Of a stretch of DNA of 64,000 nucleotides, positions 15,211-40,548 are shown one piece after another. The stretch is taken from contig CM074511.1 in the NCBI GenBank assembly GCA_037379345.1, positions 66,718,862 to 66,782,861 on the forward strand, given 5' to 3'. The notes beneath the pieces are model-generated. The model made no database searches, was not told where the DNA came from, and worked only from the letters and a program-made list of their open reading frames with translations. Every line of letters starts with the position of its first letter. Position 1 is the first letter of the stretch. The DNA is from Perna viridis. Taxonomy: Eukaryota. The position numbers and the translations under genes were made by a program.

Positions 15211-16624
15211 GTTAAACCAATGATGCTTCTTTGGAAGTGTTCATTTAGAGCAAAAATGTCGAAAATGCGGTTTTTACTAATTCTGTAGCTAATTTTGGTC
15301 CTCAAACTGATTTTTCACAAATTTGCATTTTTTGAGAACAATAGACGTTTTTCTACAGATTCTAATGCTTTAAGGCATTTGAACAACAGTTTTTTTTCAA
15401 ATAGGCCTTACTTGTGATCATAATCCTGGGGAAAATGTTTCAAATGTATTAATCTTTGTCTTTTATCGTTGTGATTAATTGTATTACACAACATGTTTTG
15501 ATGCTTGTATTACACATTTGCGTCTCAATAGCTTGAATTATTGTTTTACTTTCCACACTCTTTCTCTCAATCACGATGCAGATTTTTGCATGCTTGCGTA
15601 TCCAAGAACTTAAAAGATTTACTTATGTAATTATGTATAGTATTGTTTCAATATTTTACAGCAGTTGTCAAGTTGCTTTTTGTTAAATCCTTGTCATTGT
15701 GAACCTAGACATATTCGACAAATCGTTTCCTACTCAATAAGTGTATAAGCTTACAAAGAAAATTAGGAAAGAAAATCTTTATGTTAACGAGACAGGCTTG
15801 TTAGACAAAATTCTATCGTGTCAATATGTCGAGTATACACGCAAACCGTGCATTCAACTCCCAAGTTGTGTTTGTTCTTCTCAAGTATCTATAATTCATA
15901 CCGGTATTAGCTTATATTTCTTTCAAATAAAAAAGAAATCTTATTGAAGTGCTGTCTCGACACGACACCGTACTACAAACATTGCATTACGTGGCTATTA
16001 TAAGCATCAACATGGATGTCTCAAGATTACTTCAATGTCAACAGTTTTCCCAATACTAATGACAACGACGTAGATATATACATGATTACTGATAACCATA
16101 GATTGTGGGTTGAAACATTTCAATTGAAATGTATAAGTTGCCAGGTGTAAGTATTTTGTATTGATTTTGTCAATACCGTTTTGAGTTTAAAGTGTTTAAA
16201 CAATAAACAAAATATTCTCTTTTAATGATAAACAAATTTCATATTTTTGTCCATTTGTAGCGGTTTATGGTCTGATAGACAATGAGCATGTGACGATAAA
16301 GTCTTCTCAGTTTTCAGTACTTCATGATATAATATTTATTTATTGCAATCCAACAGATAGATATAAATACAAAATAACTCATATTAATACAGTGGTTCAA
16401 GGAGTAACCTGTCATCAGCAGCATCTGAATCAAATACAAAGTATGATCTGCATCGAAAAAAGAATTGTACTCAAGAACTATTAAAAATTAAAACTGTCGA
16501 AACAGGAAGTCAAATCCATCACCAAGAGGTTTTACCATGTGCATTACAATCAAGTGAAATGTACGAACATCATTGATAAGCCATTGAAAATGTATGGAGC
16601 GCCGCAGCTGCCGTATGCGTACTT

Positions 16625-17415
16625 ACTTCTATATATGTACATACTTGTCCATATATACACATACTTTGTCTATTTATGCAAATATTTGTTTATATGCACA
16701 TATTTGTTTATATGCACATACTTTTTCTCTTTATGCATATACTTTTTCTCTTTATGCACATTCTCCATGCAGGTCCGGGTGTTGAAGAATAGGCCTGCAG
16801 CAGCGCTAAGTTCGTCGTAAAAGGCGACTAAATAGTGCTCAGAACCCTAGCCGGGGGCTAGGGCGCTCTGCCCACAGAGCAACTGGAATGTGTGCCCCAG
16901 GAGGTGGAATGGGGTACCCCTGGTGTGTTACATGCTGGGGTTGACAGTGGCAATCAAAATTTGTCGACCCCATTGTCCTTGTGTCCCATCCCTTTTTCAT
17001 TTCATCATCATTTCATGTTCATTGTCTGAATATACCTGAAATATTGCTGCTCGGACGTTAATCCCCAACAGACAAACAAACAAACTCTTTATGCACATAC
17101 TTTGTCTTTTTATGCAAATATTGTCTATATGCACATACCTTTCTCTATATGCACATGCTTGTTCTATATATGCACATACTTTTTTCTATATATGCACATA
17201 CTTGTCTATATATGCACATACTTTTTTCTATATATGCACATACTTGTCTATATATGCACATACGTTTTTCTATATATGCACATACTTGTCTATATATGCA
17301 CATACTTGTCTATATGTGCACATACCTTTCCCTATATGCACATGCTTGTTCTATATATGCACATACTTTTTTCTATATATGCACATGATTTTTCTCTATA
17401 GTTTTTCTATATATG
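16625..17415. repeat. Subterminal tatatgcacatac minisatellite of the family 1 transposon, interrupted by a SINE; inverted counterpart at 20155-20290
   Basis: Many short units built on ctatatatgcacatac. Confidence 0.9.
16762..17084 (+). mobile_element. SINE with structured non-tRNA head, internally deleted copy
   Basis: 14-bp TSD ctctttatgcacat (16748-16761 and 17085-17098) and a ggacgttaatcccc(aaac)n tail. Homologous to 40549-41062 but missing the central part. Confidence 0.85.
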
Positions 17416-17602
17416 TCACGTAGTTCTCCATGTGTATACTTTTATCTGATTTTCCTGGTAGTTCTTCGTGGGTATACTCATATTCAATATGAGAATGGCC
17501 ATGCATATAATTTACATTTTCCGGATGGAAGGAATGCTGGGTAAAAGTAAGCATTAAATAAAAGGCAGAGCCTCTGATGCTGACTGTGTTAAAGAAAATT
17601 GA

Positions 17603-18876
17603 TTGCAAGAAGTGTACGAAAATTTGGAACTTGAAGCCATAACTCCTGATATCATTAGTCTGCTCTCAAAACAAAATTTGCAAATGTTAGGTATCCCAAA
17701 TGCATGTAATATGATGAAATTGCAGGCAGAGAGTGTCAAATATGGAAAATCCAAACTACAGGAAATAAGAGGATATTCCGGAGCACCGAAATTTGATATT
17801 GATAAATTAACGGTGGACAATTTGTTAGATTGTGCTTCCAAATATCTGAAATAGAAAAACTTTTATTAGTATCAGAGCGCACAACATATCGTCGAATGGC
17901 CCACTTTGGATTGTCAAAGCCACAGTTTTTTTCGAAATAGACGGTGATGATCTGGAAAGAGTTGTTTCGGAAACCATTAAAGATTTCCCTGTGTGTGGCG
18001 AGCAAATGCTTCGACAACTGTTAAGAACGAAGTGTTTAAAAATACTCAAGGAAATCATTCATGAAATAGATTTGTCTGGAGTTCACGTAAGAAATGCAGG
18101 TCCTCTCCATCGGAGTACTTATATAACATAATGGGCCCTAACCATTTGTGGCACATAGACACCGACCATAAACAAATTCGATGGAGTTTTGTAATAACTG
18201 GTGGCACTGACGGATCTAGTAGGGTGATTCAGTTTCTTTCATGTAATGACAACAACTCTTCTAAAACTGTTATGAAAAGCATCCTTACGGGTGTTGGTAA
18301 CTATGGCATCTATTGAAAATTAGATCTAACAAGGGCCGGGGAAATATATCTGTAGCGGATTTTGTGCTGAAGAAACGAGGTGAAAGCGGCATTATCATAG
18401 GTCCCAGTACCTACAATCAACGGATCGAACGACTCTGGAGGGACATTTTTGAATGCGTATTTTGCTACTACTTTTATAATCTTTTCTATTACATGGAGGA
18501 TCATTGCATTCTTGACCCCTTAAATGGTCAACATTCGGCACTTCACTACATGTTCAAGGATAAAGTTAACAGAAGGCTGAATGTGTACGTGGTATACGGA
18601 ATAAGGACTATAAAGGCTTCCTCTCTGAAAGTTTGGAGCCCAGGACAAATTTAGAACCCAGTCGGTATGCAAATGAATGAAGCGGAATTAACAGAAATAA
18701 GAGTTGAAGGGGACAATAACGATTGTGTTGCTAGAGATGGGAGAAACACCAATATTTCAACCCTTAAATCTCATAAGTGTAGGGAGATCCTAAGCAATGA
18801 ATTAAATAGAACAGGCGAGAACTTTGGTATTGATGACTACTGGAAGTCTTTGGTTATCATATCGGCAAATACTTAA
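17603..18876 (+). pseudogene. Frameshifted integrase-core (DDE) transposase with HTH regions and a SAM-like N-terminus
   Basis: Motifs GPNHLWHIDTDHKQIRWSFVITGGTDGSSR, KIRSNKGRGN and GPSTYNQRIERLWRD are spread across broken frames. Confidence 0.85.
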
Positions 18877-19321
18877 CATTAACATAATCATAAAAATAAT
18901 ATGCCATTTAAATACAAACATGATTATCAAAGAATACTGCCTTAGAATCAAACTATTTTGTATTGATTCAGTATTGTTCTTTTCAACAGTTAACGGGGTA
19001 GCTAAAATTGTTTTTATTATTAACCATCAACCACAAAATATTGAAAGTGAACCCTACTATACCAATATATATCTACTGACCAAGTATCATTTCCATAACA
19101 TGTCTAGTATCCGAGAAACGGGCGTTAGCCAGAGAACTTAATCAAGATAGGGATGGACGTAGGTATGTTGGGACGGACAAGGGTATAACGTTTAAAAAAA
19201 TTGTCATTTTATAAATTTTCCGAAGACCGGAAATGAGGGAATGTCGTGATACATGAATGAAATGACAAGTTGGTGTTGATGTTTAAGCAAAATTTATCGA
19301 ATATTTTTTACACCAAATCCT

Positions 19322-19990
19322 TAGTTGTCATTACATAAAAGAAACATAATCCCCTACTAAATCCGTCAATGCCATAATTTTTACAAACCTCCATCGAATT
19401 AGTTTATGGTTGGTGTCTATATGCCACAAATGGTAAGGACCCATTACGTTATAAGTTCTCCGATGGAGACGACATGCCTTTCTTACATGATTTCCAGACA
19501 AATCTATTTCATGAATGATGTCCCTGAGTCGCCATCGTTGTATTTTAAACCCTTCGTTCTTAATAGTTGTCGAAGCATTTGCTCGCCACACATAGGGAAA
19601 TCTTTAATGGTTTCCGAAACAACTCTTTCCAGATCATCATCGTCTATTTCGGAAAATTGTAGCTTTGACAATCCTAAGTGGGCCAATTCGACGATATGTG
19701 GTGCGCTCTGATACTAATAAAAGTTTTTCTATTTCAGATATTTGGAAGCACAATCTAACAAATTGTCGAATGTTAATTTATCAATATCAAATTTCGGTAC
19801 TCCGGAATATCCTCTTATTTTCTGTGGTTTTGGATTTTCCAAATTTAACACTCTCTGCTCGCAATTTTATCATGTTAGTTGCATTTAGGATACCTAACAT
19901 TTGCAAATTTTGTTTTGAGAGCAGACTAATGATATCAGGAGTTATGGCTTCAAGTTCCAAATTTTCCTACACATCTTGCAATCCCATTTT
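19322..19990 (-). pseudogene. Inverted 5' half of the same transposase (right arm)
   Basis: FSEIDDDDLERVVSETIKDFPMCGEQMLRQLL and RRTYNVMGPYHLWHIDTNHKLIRWRF; truncated after the first catalytic Asp region. Confidence 0.85.
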
Positions 19991-21515
19991 CTTTAACACA
20001 GTCAGCATCAGGGGCTCTCTGCCTTTTGTTTAAGGCTTACTTTTACCCACGATTCCTTCAATCCGGAAAGAGTAAAGTATATGCATGGCCATTCTAATAT
20101 TGAATATGAGCATACCCATGAAGAAAATCAGGTAAAAATATACACATGTGTATACTATGTGCATATATAGAAAAACTGTAGATAAAAAGTATGTGTATAT
20201 ATAGACAAGTTTGTGCATATATAGAAAAAAGTATGTGCATATATAGAAAAAAGTATGTGCATATAGAAAAAATGTATGTGCATATAGAGACATAAGGCAG
20301 CTGCGGCGTACCTCAACTTTTCACAATAGGTAGTAAATGAACTAGAATGGGGGGAAAGTAAAAAGAAATCACGTTTTCAATTAACAATTAGTATGTAAAC
20401 TATTTTCTACTATTCGACAAATATTTTACCCCAACAAACAAACAAACAAACAAATCAATGTTTTCCATGTTAAAAAAAAACATATATTTACTTGAGATAA
20501 TATTACACACATTGTATTTAAAAGATTTTAATGCAATCGGATACGCTTTACTCTTTTTGCACTTTTACTTTTTAAAAGTAGATAAAGGGCAAAACGTGGT
20601 TAAGTTTTAAAGCAACTTCAACGACGAAACGCTTCAACAGACCCATAAAATATTAAATGTAAAACTCATTAAGTCATATGATAGCAAATAACAAATATAT
20701 ACGTATATTGACATCATTTCTAAACAGCTAGTTAGGAGAAAAAGTGATATAATGTGTTAACATTTATTTATCATAGAAAACAAACCATCGTATTCTTTAA
20801 CATATGCCTCGTTGAAATCAATTCGTGGGTCATTAACGTGTCTTCATGTCGTTATTTCAGTTTTTATATTGAAGAAGTGTCATCGTTCTATTAACGTAGG
20901 TTGTATTATTTGTCGGGGCCTTTCATAACTTACTTGAAGGTGTGTTTACACTCACTGAAGAACATTCGGTGATCTCTGTAAGTATTTACCATTTTTAAAG
21001 GAGTCATACGTTGTTCGTTTGTTGCGTTTCACCATATTCGTTCCCTTTTCTTTTAATAACTTTGAGACCGTTTTTTTCTCCATAAAATTGTTTGGTTACT
21101 CATTATTCTCTTACTGTCTCCTATATATCAGTAACTTTGGGTAAGTAATAGTGTCCTTTCTACCAAATTCATAGATGACAAATTTATTTCTGTTCGAATG
21201 CAAATTTTAAAATTTCTTTTATATTTAAAATAGCATGATTGTCTGTGCTCATACCCGGTTATTATGTGTAAGATCAAAAATGCATCGTAATAAACGTATT
21301 TCATTCTTGCTAATGTCGTTATATTTATATCTTATATTAAAATTTTGTCATTTCTCATTTATTACCCCAAATATGTAAGCATTGTTTTTTTTCTATAATC
21401 ACGCTCATTTTATGTCTGTGCTAGACAGATTTCTGACAGATATGAAACTCAGTTTAGAGTATTAAGAATTGCTTTTAAAGAATTGAGATTATAAAGACTT
21501 CAAATATAAGAAAGA

Positions 21516-28450: not shown

Positions 28451-30908
28451 AGTATTTTAACTTTTATTTTAGCTTTCAACTTCCGTACGATCAAGTTCAC
28501 AGAAAGAGGAGCTTTTTTATGTTTTTAACCAATTTATCAATTTGTGATATATATATATATATTTTTTCTGAGAGTTAAATAACCAAACCTTTCAACTGGT
28601 TCAATTACACTTTCTGTACCAACTGTTAAAATATTTGACAGACATAACACATTTTATCAATATTGAAACTTTATTCGTCAATATGCAACCCCTTTTTCAT
28701 CATAATTTCGCCCTGACAAGATTTATAATATGACAGTTTTCAAAACACCTTAAATCATTGAAAGCACGTTTATCATTCTTAAGAAATCATTTTAGTTTTA
28801 GCTCTATCTTATGTTATAGCAAATATGTATCGAAATAACTTACAGACCAACACCACATTTTCATTTTCACTTACATGTACATGTTAGTAATAGGGATTCA
28901 GATTTTTTCTTTTATTTAATGACCCCTCACTGGACATAAACTTTAAAAAAAGTCTGTAGATAAAAATATTTGATAATGCTCTGGGACACAATGAAATAAT
29001 CTTGAAGTATTTGAGTGTAAGTGCTTGTAAGAATCAGGCAAAATTAGACAAATAAAAAACATGCATGTTAAAACTCCACCGATCTGACAATATTATTTCA
29101 CTCAAGGATGCTTTATTTATTTGAATTTTCAGTGCATTTTAATGAAATTCTAACTCAATGGTCCAGCATGGTATGGAAAATCTGGTTTATTTTCCTTAAT
29201 TACGATGGCCAAATTACACTTTCACGTTTGTCTTACCATGTTTCACCTACTGCCTGATTCTTACGCACAGGGACTGACACTTAATGTAAATGTCATATCA
29301 CGCCTGCACTTGATTGATTGATATATCTTTATTTCCTCCATTTTTAGAGATTTGGTATTCATTAAACATTTAATACAAACAGACGTTTAAACACTACAAT
29401 ACATACACGGGAATCAGTCCCCGGGTGAATACCGTTGCTACAGATGAGAGGTTTATCGTCATACGCTTTAGAAACAACTAAGTTGATTGAACAATATATT
29501 TATATATTCGAATGAAATTGAAAAAAAAAACATAAATTACTGTACTGCTATATCTCTCACTGAATCAGACTTTCTAATAGTTTGATAGGTTGTATGCTGC
29601 AAGTTGATAAAACGCATGTATTATGCATTTTTTATGATATTACACTTAAATTGCTCGTTTTTAGACTCATTTTTTAATATTTAAGTTTACATATTCTAGC
29701 ACAAATTCTGAAAAAAATGTATCAATCATCAATAATAGTTTGCTACAAGAAAATAAAGTGGTGTAGCACCGGGTACATTACAATCTTATTAATAAAGGCT
29801 ACAACTCTTGCTACTAATTTGTCATTTATAATGACGTGGCGCTCTCATGAAAAGAAGCCCCCACTCTTCTTTGTGATTGATATTTTGTTTCATTTATCAA
29901 CCATATTTGCGATATGCACCGTATTGGTAGCAACGAATTTACTGGAGTACAGTTTGTTTGTGATTTCCCATGGTTTTCAAAATAATAAACTTAATACCGA
30001 GCATATATAACGGGCGCTCCAGGGGTTCAATGCTATTACTTGTTCAATATTTCGCCAAATTCTATACAAACCTACAAACAAAAGGCTGACTCAACCCCTA
30101 AAACCGTCCTGATGTATCCGTCACTGTTTCGTGCATTTTAGAATAGCAGTATTCGTAAAAAATGGAACCTTTCTTTGCAATAATCCGTCATGTAAAAAGG
30201 GTATGTTCTAAAACTGACAAGTAGGTGAAAACAAAATATATACTGATCGTAATCTTTTCAGATTTTTTTTGTACGGTTATTGCCTGATGACAATGAAAGG
30301 AGGTGAAAAATAAAAATAGAACTTTGCTTAGACGGTCACATATAGTAATCTGCAATTTTCCTCTGGTATGTTGTAAGTCTGCGGTCTAGTGTCATTGCTA
30401 TTTGTAATAATTATTCTATTTGGATATTTTGCCATGTTTGAAGAAATATTTTATTTCAAAACTATTTGTATCTAGGATTTTATAGGATAATAAAGCTGTA
30501 GGCGTGCAGGGGACTTAAAAATGCACAGATAGTGTTTCCTTTATCAGACCTTATTGTTTAAATCATTCTCTAAGACTTCGGCAATAACGCTAATGTACGT
30601 ATCTCTGGAACTAGGTGCCCAGAAACAAAGCGCTTTTACTGGACACAAAGGTGCCGCCCTAGAATTTCCTAAGCTGAATTTCGACTTATATGCCAACAAG
30701 TAGTTTGTAGTTCAGTTATGCAGGATGGGGAGAGTTTTGCGATAATTCTTCTAGGTTTCCCATTTAACCCTATAAAAATCTGAATATTACGAAAACTGGC
30801 GCACTGCTACGATGCAACGTGAATTTTTGTTTGATATTTTCAAGGTAAATAGAATGTCATTCGCACGGAGCCCTTTTGGTCGCACAGAGATAAGAGATTG
30901 TAATTTAA

Positions 30909-31046
30909 AAAGTCCAGCGCTGTAGATTCAAAGTCCAGCGCTGTAGATTTAAAGTCCAGCGCTGTAGATTCAAAGTCCAGCGCTGTAGATTCAAAGTGTA
31001 ATATAGAGATAAAAAACGCTGTACACATAGATTAAAAATCCAGCAC
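30909..31046. repeat. 21-bp subterminal repeats (aaagtccagcgctgtagattc) of the family 2 transposon
   Basis: Four near-perfect copies plus degenerate ones; fewer copies in the right arm (38530-38605). Confidence 0.9.
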
Positions 31047-31152
31047 TTGTTGATACATAGTCAAATGTTCAAGGAAATTTAACGCTAAAATTCGTGATAA
31101 GCATTAAACGTATTGCTCCTCATATAACTTCTTCACTTTTACATGTATAGAA

Positions 31153-33409
31153 ATGGATGCAATGCAAGAAAGGAATCAGCTTATTTTTGTTTATTTTCAT
31201 CTTGGTCTTAACTACAAGGAAATAGTGGAAATCTTACACGAGAAACATGAAATTTCCATATCTTTGTGTCACCTTAAAAGACTGTTGGCTAGTTTTAGAT
31301 TATTCAGAAGAAAAAATTTCTCCGATATACTAGATGTAGCTATGTTTATTCACATTTAATGCGTGTTTTAAATCCTGATGGTGTCTGTAACAGATTGAAA
31401 CGAAGGCTCAAACGACGGGATTATAATGGACAAGGTCCAAATTTCATATGGCATCTGGACTCTTATGATAAGTTGAAGCCCTTTGGATTTTGTATAAATG
31501 GGTGTATTGACGGTTATTCAAGGTATATTATTTGGCTTCATGTTGGCAGAACAAGCAGCGACCCTCGAGTAATTGCGGGATATTACATAAAAGCAGTAAT
31601 AGAAAATAATAGAGTGCCGTTGAGAATGCGTGGTGACTAGGGGACCGAAAACATACACACGGCTGAGATGCAATCATTTTTTCATCGAAATGACCACCGG
31701 AATTCGTTCATATATGGTAGTAGCCAATATAACCTGCGTATCGAAAGTTGGTTGAGTTTACTTCGAAAGGAAGATACGGATTACTGGATCTCACTCTTTC
31801 AAACTTTTAAGAAAGATGGCTTTTACACAGGGGATTTCATCGACAAAAACCTTCTCCAGTTTTGTTTCATGCATCTTTTAAAGGTATGAAAATTGTGGAA
31901 AAAGATAATAAGAATTACTTTTCCATTTGATGCTATGTTTATGTCTTATAGGAAAAATAGCTATAACATTTTCTTTATTATTTGTTGTCATTGCATTGGT
32001 CGTTCCCTATGGACTAATCGTGTCATTGCATTGGTCGTTCCCTATGGACTAATCGTGTCATTGCATTGGTCGTTCCTTGAGGACTAATCGCTCTCTCTCT
32101 CTGTCTTTCTTTGAGTAATACCAGTGCTTTCATTATTGAATGTTTTACATGTATTAGGAAGGTTAACCATAATTGTGTCTGGGGTATGGGAGTATGGTCA
32201 CTGAATTTCTTCAACCGGCAGTACTAATCCTTGCTCGAAGGGGTGTATATTGATGTGCAGGATAAGCAAATTTACAAACTAATGTCAACATAGTGTCACA
32301 CTTAAATTGGCATCAGATGTCGGCAAAAGTATGTACCTCTAGTACAGCCCGGGGTCGTCTGTTTTGCCGGCATGGGCATTCGTGTCGTCCCGACACATCC
32401 AATTAAGTCGCCCAAAATAAGTTTGGGAGACTTNNNNNNNNNNNNNNNNNNNNNNNNNNNNNNNNNNNNNNNNNNNNNNNNNNNNNNNNNNNNNNNNNNN
32501 NNNNNNNNNNNNNNNNNNNNNNNNNNNNNNNNNNNNNNNNNNNNNNNNNNNNNNNNNNNNNNNNNNNNNNNNNNNNNNNNNTTTCCGCCAGATTTCTCGT
32601 ACACTGAGATTCCAAAAGTCATGAAACTTCATAGGAAGGTTGGTGCCTGGGCACCATGAATAGGGGTGCATCCAAATAATGGAATTCTGGTTGCCATGGA
32701 AACGGTGCAAAAATATCAAAAAACTGAAATTGGTCAATTTTTTTCCAAAGGCTACCAAACTTTATAGGAAGGTTGAGGACCAAAAATATTGGTACCATCA
32801 AGTAATGGAATTCTGGTTGCCATGGAAACAGGGTCCAACAGGGGGTTTGGGCGACTTTGAATTGGCATTTAAACACAGTATTACTATTTTAGAATTACTA
32901 CTATACGTTTTTTTTAATGCGCTCTCTTGAGACTTCCCCCTTTTTTCATATTTTTGTCTTGTTCATTTATGCAGGTATAGCCTACGTGTACTTGCATACA
33001 ATACACAGAAAATTGGATAGATACCTGCTACTGTTAGAAAGTGGAATTTCGTTGTTTTATAGCAGGAAAATTTTTACGCAATTGAAAAATGTGTTCTTTT
33101 ATTCTACAGATTGAACTGCAGGATGTGGTAGACACCTGGAACCATCACAGACTTTGGCCATGTAAGAACGAAGGAAATGTACCTGGACGTCCAGTAATGC
33201 TCTGCAATTGTCCTAGAATTGGAGATACTGTTGATTTTTTATGTCCTGTTAGACAAGACGATATCGAGGCGTGTATGGAGGAGTGTATTTTTTCAGAAGA
33301 CATTTGTGACAAAGACGTTTTTGATCTTGCTTGCATTTTAATGCGAGAAAATCGTCTGCATCAACCAGCAGACCCATATGCTGCCACTAACTTGTATATG
33401 CAGCTATGA
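31153..33409 (+). pseudogene. Two-exon DDE transposase (HTH N-terminus plus integrase core), inactivated; exons 31153-31883 and 33110-33409
   Basis: GPNFIWHLDSYDKLKPFGFCINGCIDGYSR, PLRMRGD*GTEN (in-frame TAG at 31638) and YGSSQYNLRIESW. A phase-0 GT-AG intron (31884-33109) joins HLLK to IELQDVVDTWNHHRL. There is a deletion/frameshift near 31354. Confidence 0.88.
32434..32581. other. Assembly gap inside a repetitive insertion (about 32220-32880) in the transposase intron
   Basis: Run of N flanked by aagtcgcccaaa/tttgggcgactt inverted motifs and repeated gttgccatgga units. Confidence 0.9.
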
Positions 33410-34639
33410 AATATTTTCCGTGTGCAGTTGTTGGATCCACAATTTCACTGACAATAAATTATATACAGTACTGTTCGAACAACAATAAAAAAAACTTAAA
33501 ATCGTTTTTACTAATATACGATGTATAAAAAGGAAGGTTAGACTGTCCGACAAAATATTAATTTACAATTTGATAGAACAATCTGCATTGTTTCTTGCCT
33601 TTTTAAGTTGATAATATCATGACCTGTTTCCGTCCTAACAGAATGTTGTAAATGCAGAAAATTCTGTACTGTGTTTTTATTGCATAATATACCTTGTGGA
33701 GGTACAATGCAGTGTGTGTTAGCTGAATTTGAATTGCAGAAATACTCTCAACTTTATTCTACTCTCAGAGCATATAAAGGTCTCCTTCGGTAGACTTCCT
33801 TTTACACTGTCATTTGCTACGTTAATATTTGTCAATTTCTTGGGTTGTACATATGTTTAACAAAAAAAATAAATACAAACTTTTCAGATTATTTTCAGTT
33901 TCATATTTTGGTTGATAATAGGTCTCTTGCAAAGAAATGATATGTCATAGAAAATAAAAAGGACAATATTCCAAATTTTGTTGAATTCTGTATACTTTGT
34001 ATGTATATACGCCTTGACTCAATAATTTTTATGGATCTTTACAAAATTTTGTTCAATGATAATACTTGATAAGATCTAGTCATAAAAGCTTCTTGGCAGC
34101 CTAGCATCGACAATTATCAATGGATCCTTTACAAAATTAGTACAATGGTAGTATTTATTTTCAAGGTCATGACAGGTAGTTTAAGGTCGTGGTGTGACTT
34201 TCTTGTTTTTTTTGTTTTTTTTTTTGTAGTCATAAAAGTTTGTTGGCAGCCTAGACTCAACATTCATTTGTGGGTCTAAATTGTAAAATGACAGTACTTC
34301 AGTAAGAGCTCGAATCATACTAATTTTCAAAATCGTATGATGAAGTTCAAGGTCATGGTTAGACATGATTGTTTTTTTTTAATCATGAAAGCTTGTGGTC
34401 AGCCTCGACTAAGCATTATCAATGGAACTTTACCCAATTTAGTACTGAATAAATCTGGAACCCTACTGATATGCAAAGGCATGACTAGACTTTTCCTTCA
34501 TATACACAACTTTGTGGAGTGCATGGACTTAACATTTGATTAAACTTGTTATAAAGGTATTACATGAGTGTTTTTTTTTCTTTTTTTTCTTTGTTTTTGG
34601 TTTTATTTGGATTTATTTTAAATGACATAAAGCAATGCA

Positions 34640-35132
34640 TGTCAAAATCGAACTTGACCTTCATTTTATATTATGAAACAATATGTTAAAATTTGAGAAA
34701 CCTCTGTAAAAACATTTTCTTTTAATCATATGGAAACGAAATAAACATGCTTTTTCAAACGATCATGGGCAAATAACTCTTTAACGACATTGGCAATTTA
34801 GGTCAAAATCGACTTGACCTTCATTTTATATGATGAAACAACAAATTAAAATTTGAGAAAGCTATGTTAAAGCGTTTTCTTTTAATCCTTTGGAAACTAA
34901 GTAAACATGCTTTTTCAAATGATTAAGGGCAAATAACTCTTGAACGGCAAAAGCAATTTATGTCAAAATCGAACTTGACCTTCATTTTGTATTATGAAGC
35001 AACATATTAAATTTGAGAAAGCTATGTTAAAGCGTTTTCTCTTAATCATCTGGAAACGAAAAGTGTGACGGACAGACGGACGGACGTGTGGATCACAACA
35101 TACCACCTCCCTCTAGGGGAAGGGGTATAAAA
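34640..35132 (-). mobile_element. Helentron-associated (HINE/pearl-like) element with internal satellite repeats of about 161 bp
   Basis: Three units start with gtcaaaatcg (about 34641, 34802, 34963), followed by a gacggacagacggacggac microsatellite and a ggggtataaaa end. Confidence 0.7.
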
Positions 35133-35199
35133 AGCAACGGAAGGGATATACGTCCAAATAATAAACACCCTGGCCACGGGCAAATTTATGACTAGGACC

Positions 35200-35365
35200 A
35201 AATGACTAGCATAAATCATGACAAAAGCACAACGCTGCAAACTAAAGCCTGAGTCATAATAAGACATGCATACCCTAGAAAACCGTATTGATTTGGAAAT
35301 GTAGACTTCATAAGCAAATTCACCAATAATGTTGCTACTCAAGAACGGAAAGTTCACAATTGGAA
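35200..35365 (-). mobile_element. Penelope-like RT fragment of a second family
   Basis: PIVNFPFLSSNIIGEFAYEVYISKSIRFSRVCMSYYD. Confidence 0.75.
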
Positions 35366-35413
35366 AAAAATTAGGACTTCACTAAATTTGACAATTTACT
35401 GGCTTTGACCTCT

Positions 35414-35512
35414 GGGCAGTATGACCGGTGTCGTATGCGAAACTGAGGATACCCTTACCCTTCCGGAGCACCTGGTATCGCTCCCGGTTTTTCATTGGAG
35501 TTTTTATTGCCT
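35414..35512 (+). mobile_element. Penelope-like 3' UTR structured module (family B), back-to-back with the RT fragment
   Basis: Core cttacccttccggagcacctg with flanking complementary arms. Confidence 0.7.
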
Positions 35513-37757
35513 AAAGCTTTATTTTTTGTAAAATAAGGGTAAAATGGAATATATGCCGGAAAGACGGCAAGTCACATCTTTAATAGGTTACAAATTTACT
35601 TTATGAATTCAATTGCATGTGAAGTACTTTTCTGGATTGACCGTCGTCAGACATATTTACTGTTTGTGGTGTATCTTTTGTTTGTAAGTGGGACTGTCGT
35701 TTACTTTTTTCGATGTTCATTGTTCGTGGCGTTTTTCTTCTTGTCGGCATGTCTTTGTTTGTTTGCCTCATCCCTGTACAGTTCTTTCCAGTGCGATTCA
35801 CGAATTTGCCTTTGGTAAAATTAGTTTGGTATCTTCTACACTATATTACCTCGCCAAAAATAAATGGTTCAGCTCACTGGTCCGGTCAGTACAGAAAATA
35901 TTCTCAATTTGATTACGCATATATTTTTTCTAAAGTTAAATTCAGGATAGCCGACTAGTCAAAACAGTTCACGTATTGCTTTTTTTTCTCTGACAAAATA
36001 AGTAAATTGTGGTCTTTAAGTCGGCGGTATGAATGAATACGCATTATTATATTTATAGGAATAAATCTAAGTGTTTATTTTATATTTATCAACTGTAATT
36101 ATCGAGGAACAATTAGTTCATTTAATTCACGATTTATTATCGTTGTTAGTAACAAAAACAAGAAAAACTGTGTCCATTGACTCGAATAATTCAAGCTCTT
36201 TCCGTCTTCATTGGATTGATCGTATTTGAGCGCAATATAATGACTGGATTATGCGGTCTATGCATTCTTAGGGCGTATGTCCCCGCCTCACAGAACGTCG
36301 ATGCTGCGTCACTTTAAGGATAAAGCTGCATAATAAATTTCAAAATATTCCAATAAATGGTTTCAAATTTAGTTGTGTTTGGGCATGTAAATACTCTAAG
36401 TAAAAGTCCTAAACAGGAAGCTGATGCACAACTACATTTTTAGAGTTTATAGTAGCGGTTTTTAGGGATATTTGTGCGTAAAAGAGTAATTATCCAAGGT
36501 TAAGTCCGAAAATTGTTCGTGAAACGTTCACATCGCATAATTCTCTTATACATTTGGCTTTTGAATCAAAATTTTTCAGATTTGATGAAAGGTTTATATA
36601 TCTGTCATAATGGTATTTATTGATAAAATGAATACCGTAAAATGAAACCCATTTTACTTCTGTGACTTCTTGTAAAACGGAAAGGTGCAACCCTACCCAC
36701 TATTCTAAAATTAACGTTTGAAAGAAAAAAAATAGAGTTTTCGACCAAAAAGGTATTTTCATATTTGTTTTTACACATAAGCCACAAAAAGGATATATTT
36801 CAATTACATGCCAAGAATTTGTAATTTTGTAAATTTACATTGAAAAAATTAGATTTAAAAAAAAGCGTAACCTTGTCCATTAATGATTATGTTCAGTTTT
36901 TTAAGTGCGTTAATGAGTAGCCAAACATTTTCGTCCTGTTATTGTTTAATACAATATTTTTCATTGGCAGTGATCAAAATGGTATGTAAGATAATGAGTC
37001 AACGTTTGAGCATTGCATGATTTAAAAAATAACCATCTGAAGCATTCAAGATTAAGGTTTATTTCCTCTATCTGTATACGTATAATGACAGTTTAATTTG
37101 GTAAGTGATCGAGTATTTAGGAGTATGTGTTTGACACATGAAGACTGGCACTGACATCATTGAGTTTATTCAGGTTTGGTTCATTCCCCAGTTCATAAAT
37201 ACACGATATATTATTTTTTAAAAATATGTTGGTGTGCTGCAGGGAATACACGTATGCCTTAGTGAATCTGAAGTACTTCATGTGCATGTCGTGCGTCCTT
37301 GACCGTAAATGAACAATAATTTTCATTCAATTTTTTGAAAATTATTTCATATTTTTGTTGGACCAGAGAAAGAATTCGTATTAAACATAGCATGATTAAT
37401 ATATTTTGTTACATTTGTTTGGTCGCAGTTTGTTGATTTCTTCCCTATAATTCATGTACACCGACAGACTTTCAGTACATAGTGTGAGTACCTCGGGACA
37501 GGTGTTGTGTATCGAGAAAAAATATTTAATAATGTAAAATCGGCTATTTTCTGCCTATAGTTACATTAATGAAAAGATGTCATTTCTTTAAGCTCATTCA
37601 AACTGTAGTTTTAGTTATAATAGAAAAGCTTAAGTATCAAAGGCAAATTATAAACTGTACATGAAAATACGAAGTGAAAACAGTCAGCGAGTTACAAATC
37701 CCTTTCCGTACATGGCATTAACTGTGTTCTCCTTGACGACGCTTTTCAAATTAGTCG

Positions 37758-38120
37758 CCCGATCGCGAGGTCAGCGTGCTAGCCTCGAATGCGGAAGGTC
37801 GTGGGTTCGGTCCAAGGCCTTGCTAAACCGAAGACTGTAAAATTTGTACATGCTGCTTCTCCGCCATGGGCTTGGCATTAAAGAGTAAGAGCAAAGGCTG
37901 TTTGTTTCGGAGTCAGAATAATGTGTCCGAGTAAGGTAGTATGTCTTCCTGCCGACTACTACTTAGTATCTTATGAGTTAGCATGTTAAATATCGGACTC
38001 AGCGTATCGGTTTAGTACAAAGCAGGGTTTAATAATCAATTATTAACATGCAGTCGTCCTGAATATGCATATAAATTGGCCGCTGGACGGTAAGCTACAA
38101 GTAGTCACTGACTCACTAAT
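37758..38120 (+). mobile_element. tRNA-derived SINE (Meta/MESC-domain-like) nested in the family 2 transposon
   Basis: tRNA-like head with B-box-like gggttcggtcc, central gactgtaaaatttgtacatgctgcttctccgcc...gcattaaagag, (cact)n-like tail, and 8-bp TSD attagtcg (37750-37757 and 38121-38128). Confidence 0.75.
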
Positions 38121-38428
38121 ATTAGTCGGACAATACAAAGAAAACCATGGCAGTTAATGTTTTGATGATATATCGAAATTGTGACTTTGTAAGCTTCTGA
38201 TATATAAGCAGACTTATTTACTTGATCGTGAATAAACATAGCTACATCTAGTATATCGGAGAAATTTTTTCTTCTGAATAATCTAAAACTAGCCAACAGT
38301 CTTTTAAGGTGACACAAAGATATGGAAATTCCATGTTTCTCGTGTAAGATTTCCACTATTTCCTTGTAGTTAAGACCAAGATGAAAATAAACAAAAATAA
38401 GCTGATTCCTTTCTTGCATTGCATCCAT
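38105..38428 (-). pseudogene. Truncated N-terminal (DNA-binding) part of the family 2 transposase in the right inverted arm
   Basis: The first 66 aa are nearly identical to 31153-31350. The frame continues HDQVNKS and then runs into unrelated sequence. Confidence 0.85.
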
Positions 38429-39087
38429 TTCTATACATGTAAAAGTGAAGAAGTTATATGAGGAGCAATACGTTTAATGCTTATCACGAATTCTAGCGTT
38501 AAATTTCCTCCAACGCTTGACTATGCATCAACAAGTGCTAGATTTTTAATCTACAGCGCTTTTTATCTCTATTATCAAACTTTGAACCTACAGCGCTGGA
38601 CTTTTTAAATTACAATCTCTTATCTCTGTAAGACCAACAGGGCTCCGTACATTCGTAATCAGAATGGTGAATATTAATCAAAGAATTTAATGTTAACAAT
38701 TTTTAACAACAAGCTTGACTTTATATTAGTTTGATATCGTCTCCGGTTCTTTCCTTTTATCTTATCCTATTTTTGCAATTTTAGGCGTAAAAATTCAAAC
38801 ATTCGATATAAATTGATTCAGTACATGAGTATTTTGATATATAACACTATATGACGCATTTATGACGCATTTATAAGGCAACAACGATTGTATGGGAGAT
38901 GTATTGCCACTCATTATGGACATCGTTATATTGAGCAACAAAACTCGAGAAGTCGTGTATGTGTTTTCAATTTTATAGAATATTTCTGCTTGTGTGTTTC
39001 GTTAGTATTGACATGCAAGTAACCAATGGTTGAACTCACAAACCTTTTTAACAAGAGAAACTAGTTTACACTTCAAGTGATGAAATA

Positions 39088-39542
39088 CACTCCTTGAAAC
39101 GTTCACGTTTTCCATCGTGCATCGTTTATCGTGCGTTTACACATCGTTTTGGGTGCGTTTTAAACACACGATAAACGCACGATAGAAGCGTTCGCCGATT
39201 TATTTTTGTACTTTGATTAATTATTTCCCAGATTCGGCTGTTTTTTCTTTGTGTTTTTTTTTCGTATTATTAATTTATATATTTCCATTATGTCTATTTT
39301 CTTTTCTTTCTTTCTTCATTATTTGTTAATATTATATTTAATCTTTCGTCTGTCGTGCGTTTAAACGCACGCAAGGAGCGTTCGTTTAACGTGCGTTTAA
39401 AAGTACGCTGGGAGCATCCGTTTGTCGTGAGTTTAAACGCACGATAGAAGCGTTCGTTTATCGTGCGTTTGGTGAGTGTTTACAAAATGTAGCATGCGTT
39501 TGGGTATCGTGCGTGCGGGAAACCTGAACGTCTCAAGGACTG
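39088..39542. mobile_element. Non-autonomous TIR element with CAC termini (EnSpm/CACTA-like)
   Basis: TIR cactccttgaaacgttcacgttttcc / gggaaacctgaacgtctcaaggactg and subterminal cgtgcgtttaaacgcacg palindromes. Relatives at 51737-52937 and 23174-23212. Confidence 0.75.
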
Positions 39543-39583
39543 TGACATCAAGCATTAGATCAAGCTTCAGAAGGTATAGAATT

Positions 39584-39753
39584 ACGACCCCAGCATGTAA
39601 CATGCCTAGGGGTACCCCATTCCACCACTTGGGGAACACAACCCAGCTTCTCTGTGGGCAAAGCGTCCTAGGCCCCGGCCAGGGTTCTGAGCACTATTTA
39701 GTCGCCTCTTACGACAAGCTTAGTGCTGCTGCGGGCCTATTCTTTTAACACCG
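39584..39753 (-). mobile_element. 5' head fragment of the structured-head SINE (divergent copy)
   Basis: The minus strand reads ggtgttaaaagaataggcccgcagcagcactaagcttgtcgtaagaggcgactaaatagtgct. A piece of the SINE 3' region abuts it at 39765-39800. Confidence 0.8.
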
Positions 39754-40548
39754 GCACCAGGATTAAATGAACATGAAATGATGATGAAATGAAAAATTGG
39801 AAGTCACGCAAGTCTCATGTTACAAATTCTGATATGTAGATATACAAAATTGGTAGGTATGTAGATTATATTGAGTAGCATAGACTTAATTAAATGTTAA
39901 ATACTAGTTAGTGTACATTTGATGTATGTGACCTGCGACACATACATGCATAGCATTAAAGCTATAAAATGTATAAAAAATGAGACTTTCTGGCTCCTCC
40001 CACTCACGTGATCGGCGGAACGACGTTTTTCTGGTATGCGTAAATTAATCATGGCCGCCACCATAGATACGATATAAACAAATTGCGATTACGTATCCGG
40101 TTAATCTTTTTTTTTTTTTTTGCTCTTTTGTTTCGTTTTCACCTGAATGAAATAAAAAATTATGTAAACCAAATAACGATTTTGTTTGTATTTTTTTCAC
40201 GGTCATATATATGCAAATCCCAAATCTCGTTCAGATTTGAATCATTATCAGTTTGCAGACGACTTCCCCTGTTATTTCAGTCATGTCGGACTCGGAGCCA
40301 GAGTGTCCGTCACAATTTAACATAAACTGGTCCCCACTTAAAGAAATTGAAGCATTACAAAATGATAAATCTCTTGAAGAGACAAATGACCAGGAAACTG
40401 TTATGGTCTTGGATTTATTACTGCCTATACCCCAAGATAATGAATCGGAGGAACACTACAATATAGATCTGCCCATACAACTGCCTCCTGTTCTTCAAAA
40501 ATCTCAAACAAATATTTCAAATCCCAAAGAAACTAGTGCACAAATTTC

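What the first reader, a model, noticed from the sequence alone, without database searches (positions are those of the whole stretch)
30858..38655. Eukaryotic composite-like transposon: two inverted left ends mobilised as one 7.8-kb unit
Seen: the right end (38228-38649) is not a short TIR. It is an inverted copy of the left ~490 bp, including the 21-bp subterminal repeats, the presumptive promoter and the first ~66 transposase codons. The whole unit is flanked by an exact 6-bp duplication (cattcg), and I found no separate native right end inside it. About 4.7 kb of non-transposase DNA lies between the gene and the right arm. Known: IS3EU-type elements have TAY..RTA termini and 6-bp TSDs, and bacterial composite transposons (Tn5, Tn10) use inverted IS copies. 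Inference: two left ends suffice for transposition here, so the element can capture intervening DNA.
Basis: partly seen in the sequence, partly recalled or inferred. Interest (0 to 1): 0.8.

Follow-up and report, generated by a model that had tools for sequence, protein, structure and literature searches.

The report
Dead IS3EU transposon, overgrown right end
This is a decayed 7.8-kb copy of a known kind of jumping gene (IS3EU/GingerRoot). Its right end has been lengthened by an inverted copy of its own left end, which is an unusual structural variant but not a composite transposon that captured host DNA.

Summary
Window 30864-38649 is a single insertion flanked by the 6-bp duplication cattcg. 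A related copy of the repeat it landed in shows the uninterrupted target with one copy of the 6-mer. The right end is an inverted copy of the left ~490 bp, including the first 67 transposase codons.

- **Native ends:** family members with ordinary ends and many small derivatives show that the family already has symmetric ~130-bp inverted ends (45 bp plus 21-bp repeats). "Two left ends suffice" is therefore the normal condition.
- **Interior:** 33410-37212 is the family's own body. It is also present in copies with ordinary ends, so it is not captured cargo. Only about 1 kb (37213-38210) is specific to the long-arm lineage.
- **Origin of the long arm:** it arose once. It was originally at least 680 bp, as seen in a chromosome-13 copy. 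It then transposed to at least three loci and was trimmed in this copy by two deletions.
- **State of the gene:** it is dead in every copy examined.

Termini (TACGG..CCGTA), the 6-bp duplication and the rva_4 integrase core place it in IS3EU/GingerRoot. The same layout occurs in a second family in this window, and the scan noted it earlier on other DNA of this genome (s1-766553).

The parts
30858..30863 (.). Left copy of the 6-bp target-site duplication (cattcg)
   Evidence: A paralogous empty site has a single copy.
30864..30997 (+). Left terminal inverted repeat in its canonical extent: 45-bp terminus (CACGGAGCCC..., family consensus TACGG) plus four 21-bp subterminal repeats (30909-30992)
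   Evidence: This is the same extent as the right ends of canonical copy C10 and of the small derivatives.
30998..31353 (+). Left-specific region that is duplicated in the right arm: 5' untranslated/presumed promoter region and transposase codons 1-67 (ATG at 31153)
31153..33409 (+). Transposase pseudogene (integrase-core, Pfam rva_4). Exon 1 is 31153-31886, the putative intron is 31887-33100 and exon 2 is 33101-33409. It is broken by a 97-bp deletion with frameshift at 31353/31354 and an in-frame TAG at 31638-31640.
   Evidence: The intron is inferred from GT..AG and the reading frames only.
32434..32581 (.). Assembly gap (N), inside the putative intron
   Evidence: Collinearity of both sides in three related copies. 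Not filled.
33410..37212 (.). Non-coding body of the family. It is present in all six long loci, including copies with ordinary ends. It contains a 160-bp tandem repeat (34629-35060).
   Evidence: ORFs have no Pfam match.
37213..38210 (.). About 1-kb segment found only in the long-arm lineage (window, its duplicate, C13, C3). Its origin is unknown, and it holds a dispersed repeat of about 280 bp at 37773-38052.
38211..38572 (-). Right-arm extension: inverted copy of the left 5' region and of transposase codons 1-73. It reads as a 107-aa ORF at 38105-38428 on the minus strand.
38573..38649 (-). Right terminal inverted repeat in its canonical extent: terminus TACGGAGCCC... plus one 21-bp unit
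38650..38655 (.). Right copy of the 6-bp target-site duplication (cattcg)

Best explanation
The region is an old, inactive copy of an IS3EU/GingerRoot-type cut-and-paste DNA transposon.

**Family anatomy.** The family's functional ends are a symmetric inverted repeat of about 130 bp: a 45-bp terminus TACGG... plus an array of 21-bp repeats, which are presumably the transposase binding sites. The element makes 6-bp target duplications.

**Origin of the long arm.** In one sub-lineage, the sequence just inside the right end was replaced or extended by two pieces. One is an inverted copy of the left end's interior (promoter region and the first ~130 codons, at least 680 bp). The other is about 1.65 kb of DNA of unknown source. 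The most likely cause is template switching during repair or replication: a nascent strand that had copied the right end re-paired with the identical left end and copied inwards (inferred).

**Later history.** This long-arm form was then mobilised through the same outer 130 bp as any other member. It inserted here as one unit. It later lost 97 bp in the left arm and about 920 bp next to the right arm, acquired a stop codon, and was carried along in an inverted segmental duplication 362 kb away.

**What is shown and what is inferred.** Shown: the single insertion, the family ends, the shared junctions and the later deletions. Inferred: the template-switch origin, and that the short-ended form is the older one.
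For: **Family membership.** The transposase matches Pfam rva_4 at E 6e-13 and 9e-13, and language-model neighbours are rva_4 clusters of animals. Termini TACGG..CCGTA and perfect 6-bp duplications occur in at least 8 other copies. Published IS3EU features are TA..TA or TAYGG..CCRTA termini with 6-bp duplications (PMC10045372, PMC12730594). GingerRoot has 100-150-bp inverted ends and sizes of 3.9-12.9 kb (PMC6839031).

**Single insertion.** A paralogous empty site has one copy of the target.

**Native ends of about 130 bp.** Copy C10 (L034 1723-8396, duplication GTTTAG) ends in a 128-bp inverted repeat. A dozen small derivatives have arms matching only query positions 2-134.

**Interior is family DNA.** 33420-37040 matches only the six family loci, including the short-ended C10 and C1:12.16M copies.

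**Long arm arose once and moved.**
- The window, C13 and C3 share the same junction between body and extra segment at about 37212. They also share the same ~1-kb segment.
- C13 and C3 continue into a further 650 bp.
- The C13 right arm reaches the equivalent of 31544.
- A fold-back derivative on C2 keeps inner-arm sequence up to the equivalent of 31449 and has its own duplication, GATAAT.

**Breakpoint.** In C1:12.16M the body joins the 21-bp array within about 10 bp of where the long-arm copies diverge, with an A/T-rich microhomology. Template switching guided by microhomology at repetitive inverted ends is a published route for sequence gain in such elements (PMC8277862).
Against: - The tree of the shared body is a star, with tips of 2.3-2.9%. 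It does not say whether the short or the long form is older.
- Four of the six long loci carry the long-arm segments.
- No source locus for the 1.65-kb extra DNA was found in the genome.
- The right arm of C13 lacks its last ~90 bp and C3 is truncated. The window copy and the C2 derivative are therefore the only long-arm insertions with both ends and a duplication.
- No read-level check of the assembly was possible.
Confidence: 0.75

Rival explanations
1. Long arms are the native state. The family originally had inverted ends of 0.7 kb or more that overlap the start of the transposase gene. The short-ended copies (C10, C1:12.16M) and the small derivatives are deletion products.
For: - Most long loci carry the long-arm segments.
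- A second IS3EU family in the window has arms of about 1 kb reaching the first catalytic aspartate.
- The scan reports a third family with ~2-kb arms (s1-766553, not tested here).
- The star tree does not contradict this reading.
Against: - The short-ended C1:12.16M copy joins the body to the array within about 10 bp of the array's inner edge. C10 is a further deletion of that form. A random deletion within about 2.3 kb would rarely end there.
- The extra 1.65 kb between body and arm has no counterpart on the left, so the structure is not a simple long inverted repeat.
- Described GingerRoot ends are 100-150 bp (PMC6839031).
Confidence: 0.14
2. This is a true composite. Two separate insertions in inverted orientation bracketed host DNA, and their two outer left ends were then used together, capturing what lay between.
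For: - The ~1-kb segment (plus 650 bp in C13 and C3) between body and inverted arm is not otherwise part of the family and could be former host DNA.
- The unit has a clean duplication.
Against: - No inner right end of the first element and no inner duplication exist.
- The body joins the extra segment exactly where the canonical right end would begin. That end would have had to be removed precisely, and most of the second element would have had to be deleted too.
- No host source locus was found.
- Most of the supposed cargo is family DNA.
Confidence: 0.09
3. Assembly artefact: the inverted arm comes from a chimeric or fold-back read, or from a wrong join at the gap.
For: An N gap lies inside the element. 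Long inverted repeats are prone to misassembly.
Against: - The same architecture, with the same junctions, occurs at independent loci on C13, C3 and C2 and in the diverged duplicate on C1.
- The arms differ by 2-6% and by array length.
- The flanks match an empty site.
Confidence: 0.02

Closest known systems
[quoted passage not shown] 2019, PMC6839031; Kojima and Bao 2023, PMC10045372)
   Same: - Integrase-like DDE core (rva_4) behind an N-terminal helix-turn-helix region.
- TA..TA (TAYGG..CCRTA) termini and a 6-bp target duplication.
- Canonical inverted ends of about 130 bp.
- Multi-kb size with much non-transposase DNA.
   Different: In this lineage the right end is lengthened by an inverted copy of the promoter region and the N-terminal coding sequence. 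I did not find this described for the superfamily in the papers read. Repbase itself could not be consulted.
Bacterial composite transposons Tn5 / Tn10
   Same: Inverted copies of transposon-end sequence bracket a unit that moves as a whole.
   Different: The flanking modules here are not two complete, separately mobile elements. There are no inner ends, and the DNA between the arms is the element's own body.
Mu killer (maize) and Ac killer: natural inverted duplications of the 5' part of a transposon (PMC1563492; bioRxiv 10.1101/2020.01.07.897926)
   Same: An inverted duplicate of the terminal repeat plus the 5' part of the transposase gene. It could in principle give a hairpin or double-stranded RNA.
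   Different: Those loci are immobile rearranged derivatives, and their silencing activity has been shown. Here the duplication sits inside an element that stayed mobile, and no RNA evidence is available.
Sequence gain by gap-filling / fork-stalling template switching in elements with inverted ends (Pack-TIRs; Tan et al. 2021, PMC8277862)
   Same: A breakpoint at a repetitive end, microhomology at the junction, filler DNA of other origin, and later amplification by transposition.
   Different: Part of the sequence gained here is the element's own opposite end in inverted orientation, so the inverted repeat grows. It is not a host gene fragment.

Membership tests
IS3EU/GingerRoot | Integrase-like DDE transposase core | tested here: met
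   Pfam rva_4 (PF24764) at E 6.4e-13 on 31359-31637 and 9.1e-13 on the intact 177-aa ORF of L033. D (WHLDSYD), D (RGD*GTEN) and E (NLRIES) positions are visible by eye.
IS3EU/GingerRoot | Termini TA..TA (TAYGG..CCRTA) | tested here: met
   The family consensus is TACGGAGCCC...GGGCTCCGTA in more than 20 ends. The window's right end is TACGG and its left end is CACGG, one change. The feature is as published in PMC10045372 and PMC12730594.
IS3EU/GingerRoot | 6-bp target-site duplication | tested here: met
   Window CATTCG, C10 GTTTAG, C2 GATAAT, and the small derivatives AATCGA, GAAAAG, GGTATA, CAATTA, CCTATG. Empty site.
IS3EU/GingerRoot | Terminal inverted repeats of about 100-150 bp (GingerRoot description) | tested here: met
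   128 bp in copy C10, and 125-135 bp in the small derivatives. The window copy exceeds this on top of the canonical part.
IS3EU/GingerRoot | Transposase falls in the IS3EU/GingerRoot clade in a phylogeny | not tested
   No reference set of Repbase proteins was on hand.
Composite transposon (Tn5/Tn10 type) | Two complete insertion-sequence copies, each with its own pair of ends | tested here: not met
   There are only two termini in the window and no inner ends. The right arm was about 0.7-0.8 kb at most in the least-deleted copy.
Composite transposon (Tn5/Tn10 type) | Foreign cargo DNA between the two modules | tested here: not met
   33410-37212 is shared with short-ended family copies and found nowhere else. 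The test is inconclusive only for 37213-38210.
Mu killer-like silencing locus | Inverted duplication of the end plus the 5' transposase region | tested here: met
Mu killer-like silencing locus | Hairpin transcript and derived small RNAs | not testable with these tools

The most novel reading that the evidence does not exclude
Growth of the right inverted end by copying the left end (promoter plus N-terminal coding region) may be a recurrent, superfamily-specific property of IS3EU/GingerRoot elements. In this genome it is seen in this family and in a second family in the same window. The scan also reports it in a third family with ~2-kb arms. It would reflect either how these little-studied elements are copied or repaired, or a self-limiting device: hairpin RNA, or a truncated DNA-binding protein made from the right arm.
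Probability: 0.15. Interest if true: 0.55.

Novelty: new variant of a known kind. Interest (0 to 1): 0.3.

Why it matters
The structure and mechanism of IS3EU/GingerRoot elements are little studied; PMC11934779 says so explicitly.

This locus and its relatives give a dated, internally consistent example of several things:
- how the inverted ends of such an element can grow to include the start of its own gene;
- that the enlarged form stays mobile;
- how it then erodes.

If the pattern is general in the superfamily, it bears on how these elements are copied or silenced. It also matters for annotation, because inverted 5' gene fragments can be mistaken for composite transposons or separate insertions. 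For this single locus the result is mostly a clarification. The element is ordinary, dead and not a cargo-capturing composite.

Tried and rejected
- **Captured host DNA in 33450-38200:** rejected for 33410-37212.
- **A second gene in the interior:** nine ORFs of 59-103 aa gave no Pfam match.
- **Exon 2 similarity:** exon 2 (33101-33406) has no Pfam match on its own and no similarity to the second family's C-terminal ORF. The intron model therefore rests on GT..AG and the frames alone.
- **Independent copy on C1:66.38M:** rejected. Its flanks match the window's for at least 1.7 kb on each side at about 96%, so it is a segmental duplicate.
- **Polarity from a tree:** the tree is a star and gives no resolution.
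- **Genome-wide enrichment of convergent pairs of IS3EU 5' regions:** among about 140 protein matches, only two further convergent pairs, one divergent pair and one tandem pair were seen. No clear general rule follows.
- **TSD of the second family's window copy:** its right terminus is damaged and no duplication is recognisable.
Full report
- The repeat finder reports inverted arms at 31028-31353 / 38228-38553 (326 nt, 98%) and at 30865-30934 / 38579-38648 (70 nt, 94%).
- Between these stretches the left end has four 21-bp units (AAAGTCCAGCGCTGTAGATTC) and the right end has one.
- The hexamer cattcg stands at 30858-30863 and 38650-38655, directly outside CACGGAGCCC... and ...GGGCTCCGTA.
- The terminal 33-mer occurs only twice in the 64-kb window, where none is expected by chance. 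No 21-bp units lie inside the element.

**2. Is it one insertion?** Both flanks belong to a dispersed repeat with hundreds of copies.
- In one copy (C2:7568610-7568750), the sequences matching the left and right flanks are contiguous.
- That copy aligns without a gap to the window's flanks joined with a single copy of the hexamer: TATTCT there, CATTCG here.
- A second copy on C9 has the same register.

**3. The gap.**
- The Ns at 32434-32581 lie between a GT at 31887 and an AG at 33099-33100. That is inside what I read as an intron separating ...FCFMHLLK from IELQDVVDTWNHH....
- In three related copies (L031, L034, L037) the sequences matching the two sides of the gap are collinear, in the same orientation and 47-101 bp apart. 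I used coordinates only and did not read or fill the letters.
- The gap therefore does not bear on the reading frame or on the architecture.
- The intron itself is an inference.

**4. What the element is.**
- The coding pieces match Pfam rva_4, an integrase core domain (E 6e-13). The nearest protein-atlas clusters are rva_4 proteins of cnidarians, chordates and molluscs.
- Across the genome the family's ends read TACGGAGCCC...GGGCTCCGTA.
- Paired ends carry perfect 6-bp duplications: GTTTAG, GATAAT, AATCGA, GAAAAG, GGTATA, CAATTA and CCTATG.
- Published features of IS3EU/GingerRoot are TA..TA or TAYGG..CCRTA termini and 6-bp duplications (PMC10045372, PMC12730594). GingerRoot has 100-150-bp inverted ends and sizes of 3.9-12.9 kb (PMC6839031). 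All features tested are met; only a phylogeny was not done.
- The gene is dead here. It has a 97-bp deletion with frameshift right after ...AMFIH (31353/31354) and a TAG at 31638-31640.
- All other copies translated also carry stops or frameshifts. The longest open stretch is 177 aa, in the C1:12.16M copy.

**5. The family's native ends.**
- Copy C10 (L034 1723-8396) is 6.7 kb and has the duplication GTTTAG. Its right end matches the left end only over 128 bp: the terminus plus the 21-bp array.
- About a dozen small derivatives of 0.3-0.6 kb have arms matching only positions 2-134 of the left end, each with its own duplication.
- The functional ends are therefore a symmetric inverted repeat of about 130 bp.
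- The outer 77 bp of the window's right arm are simply the ordinary right end. That 'two left ends suffice' is true but trivial.

**6. The interior.**
- 33420-37040 matches only six loci: the window, C1:66.38M, C13, C10, C1:12.16M and C3. These include the two short-ended copies.
- Apart from that, only short dispersed motifs match: a 160-bp tandem repeat and a motif of about 100 bp.
- This stretch is therefore the family's own body, not cargo captured by the left-left arrangement.
- Its ORFs have no Pfam match.

**7. The long-arm lineage.**
- The window, C13 and C3 leave the short-ended form at the same point, about 37212. There the C1:12.16M copy runs straight into the inverted 21-bp array. 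From that point they share a segment of about 1 kb (37213-38210).
- C13 and C3 continue with a further 650 bp that is found nowhere else.
- In C13 this is followed by an inverted copy of the left end reaching the equivalent of 31544. That is a 682-bp arm which has lost its last ~90 bp.
- The window copy is this structure minus about 920 bp. The deletion joins the 1-kb segment to the arm at 38210/38211.
- A 1.1-kb fold-back derivative on C2 (L035 1021-2129, duplication GATAAT) keeps inner-arm sequence up to the equivalent of 31449. It therefore descends from the undeleted long-arm form.
- The long arm thus arose once and was mobile afterwards.
- The present ~490-bp symmetry in the window is the accidental result of two later deletions.

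**8. History and age.**
- The C1:66.38M copy shares the window's flanks for at least 1.7 kb on each side at about 96%, the same duplication and the same 97-bp deletion. It is an inverted segmental duplicate 362 kb away, not a separate transposition.
- A tree of 1.4 kb of shared body is a star with tips of 2.3-2.9%. Only the window and its duplicate are joined.
- The arm sequences show the same star pattern, at 93-98.7% pairwise identity.
- Short and long forms therefore spread in the same burst, and the tree cannot say which is older.
- I favour short-first because the short form's junction sits within about 10 bp of the array's inner edge. That placement would be an unlikely endpoint for a random deletion. 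It also matches the end length described for GingerRoot.

**9. Mechanism (inferred).**
- A strand being synthesised inwards from the right end can, after copying the ~130-bp end, re-pair with the identical left end in the opposite orientation. It can then continue into left-specific sequence, and further switches add filler.
- The junction between body and extra segment lies at the tandem array and shows an A/T-rich microhomology.
- This is the pattern described for gap-filling and fork-stalling template switching in elements with repetitive inverted ends (PMC8277862).
- Two possible consequences are untested. One is a transcript with complementary ends, as at the maize Mu killer locus (PMC1563492). 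The other is a truncated N-terminal protein read from the right arm: the 107-aa ORF at 38105-38428 on the minus strand.

**10. Is it recurrent?**
A second, divergent IS3EU family (termini TATGGA.CGCC...) has inverted arms of about 1 kb that reach the first catalytic aspartate.
- A 1.85-kb fold-back derivative of that family on C3 has a 5-of-6 duplication.
- Another report of the scan (s1-766553, not tested here) describes a third family in this genome with ~2-kb arms at ten loci.
- Among about 140 genomic matches to the N-terminal 177 aa, I saw only two further convergent pairs. The pattern is repeated but not universal.

**11. Verdict.** The composite-transposon reading is only partly supported. 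The locus is a dead member of a known superfamily with an unusual, lineage-specific enlargement of its right inverted end. Interest is moderate to low for this locus alone, and somewhat higher if end growth proves to be a general trait of IS3EU elements.

Noticed in passing
window 16593-20312: A second, divergent IS3EU-type family (termini TATGGAGCGCC...) has inverted arms of about 1 kb (17142-18197 / 19378-20290). The arms include the transposase 5' half up to the first catalytic D. Its left subterminal repeat array is about 0.8 kb against about 0.1 kb on the right. The right terminus is damaged and no duplication is recognisable.
   Followed up: partly
L031 1344-4022 (C13:28083343-28086021): The 21-bp subterminal repeat of the family is expanded to 127 units (about 2.7 kb) in the left end of the C13 copy, against 4 in the window. 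It amounts to a satellite-like array born from transposase-binding repeats.
   Followed up: partly
window 29172-40548 vs L032 (C1:66379500-66389499): An inverted segmental duplication of at least 11 kb, at about 96% identity, lies 362 kb away on the same chromosome. It carries the element and its flanks. The duplicate has lost 32135-33603 and 37952-38228.
   Followed up: partly
window 30560-30863 and 38650-38840: The insertion target is itself a dispersed repeat, with 870 and 1463 first-look candidates in the genome at 70-84% identity.
   Followed up: partly
window 34629-35060: A 160-bp tandem repeat (about 2.7 units) lies inside the element body. Related sequence at about 70% identity is scattered over many chromosomes.
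   Followed up: no
window 35416-35530: A motif of about 100 bp matches dozens of dispersed loci at 76-90% identity.
   Followed up: no
window 37773-38052: A dispersed repeat of about 280 bp (about 70% identity at more than 30 loci) is nested in the lineage-specific 1-kb segment.
   Followed up: no
window 39122-39474: A 36-bp tandem and inverted repeat cluster (CGTTT.TCGTGCGTTTAAACGCACG...) lies just right of the element.
   Followed up: no
window 30864; L032 2075: The first base of the terminus is C instead of T at the window's left end. In the segmental duplicate the same change is at the opposite (right-equivalent) end. These are two separate T-to-C changes at the same terminal position.
   Followed up: no
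G000 C2:60357429-60357929, C6:35425784-35426269, C2:67155144-67155653, C9:16484127-16484588, C12:30101131-30101625: Other IS3EU-like families (37-44% identity to this transposase's N-terminal part) sit in open frames of 366-419 aa. They may be better preserved members.
   Followed up: no
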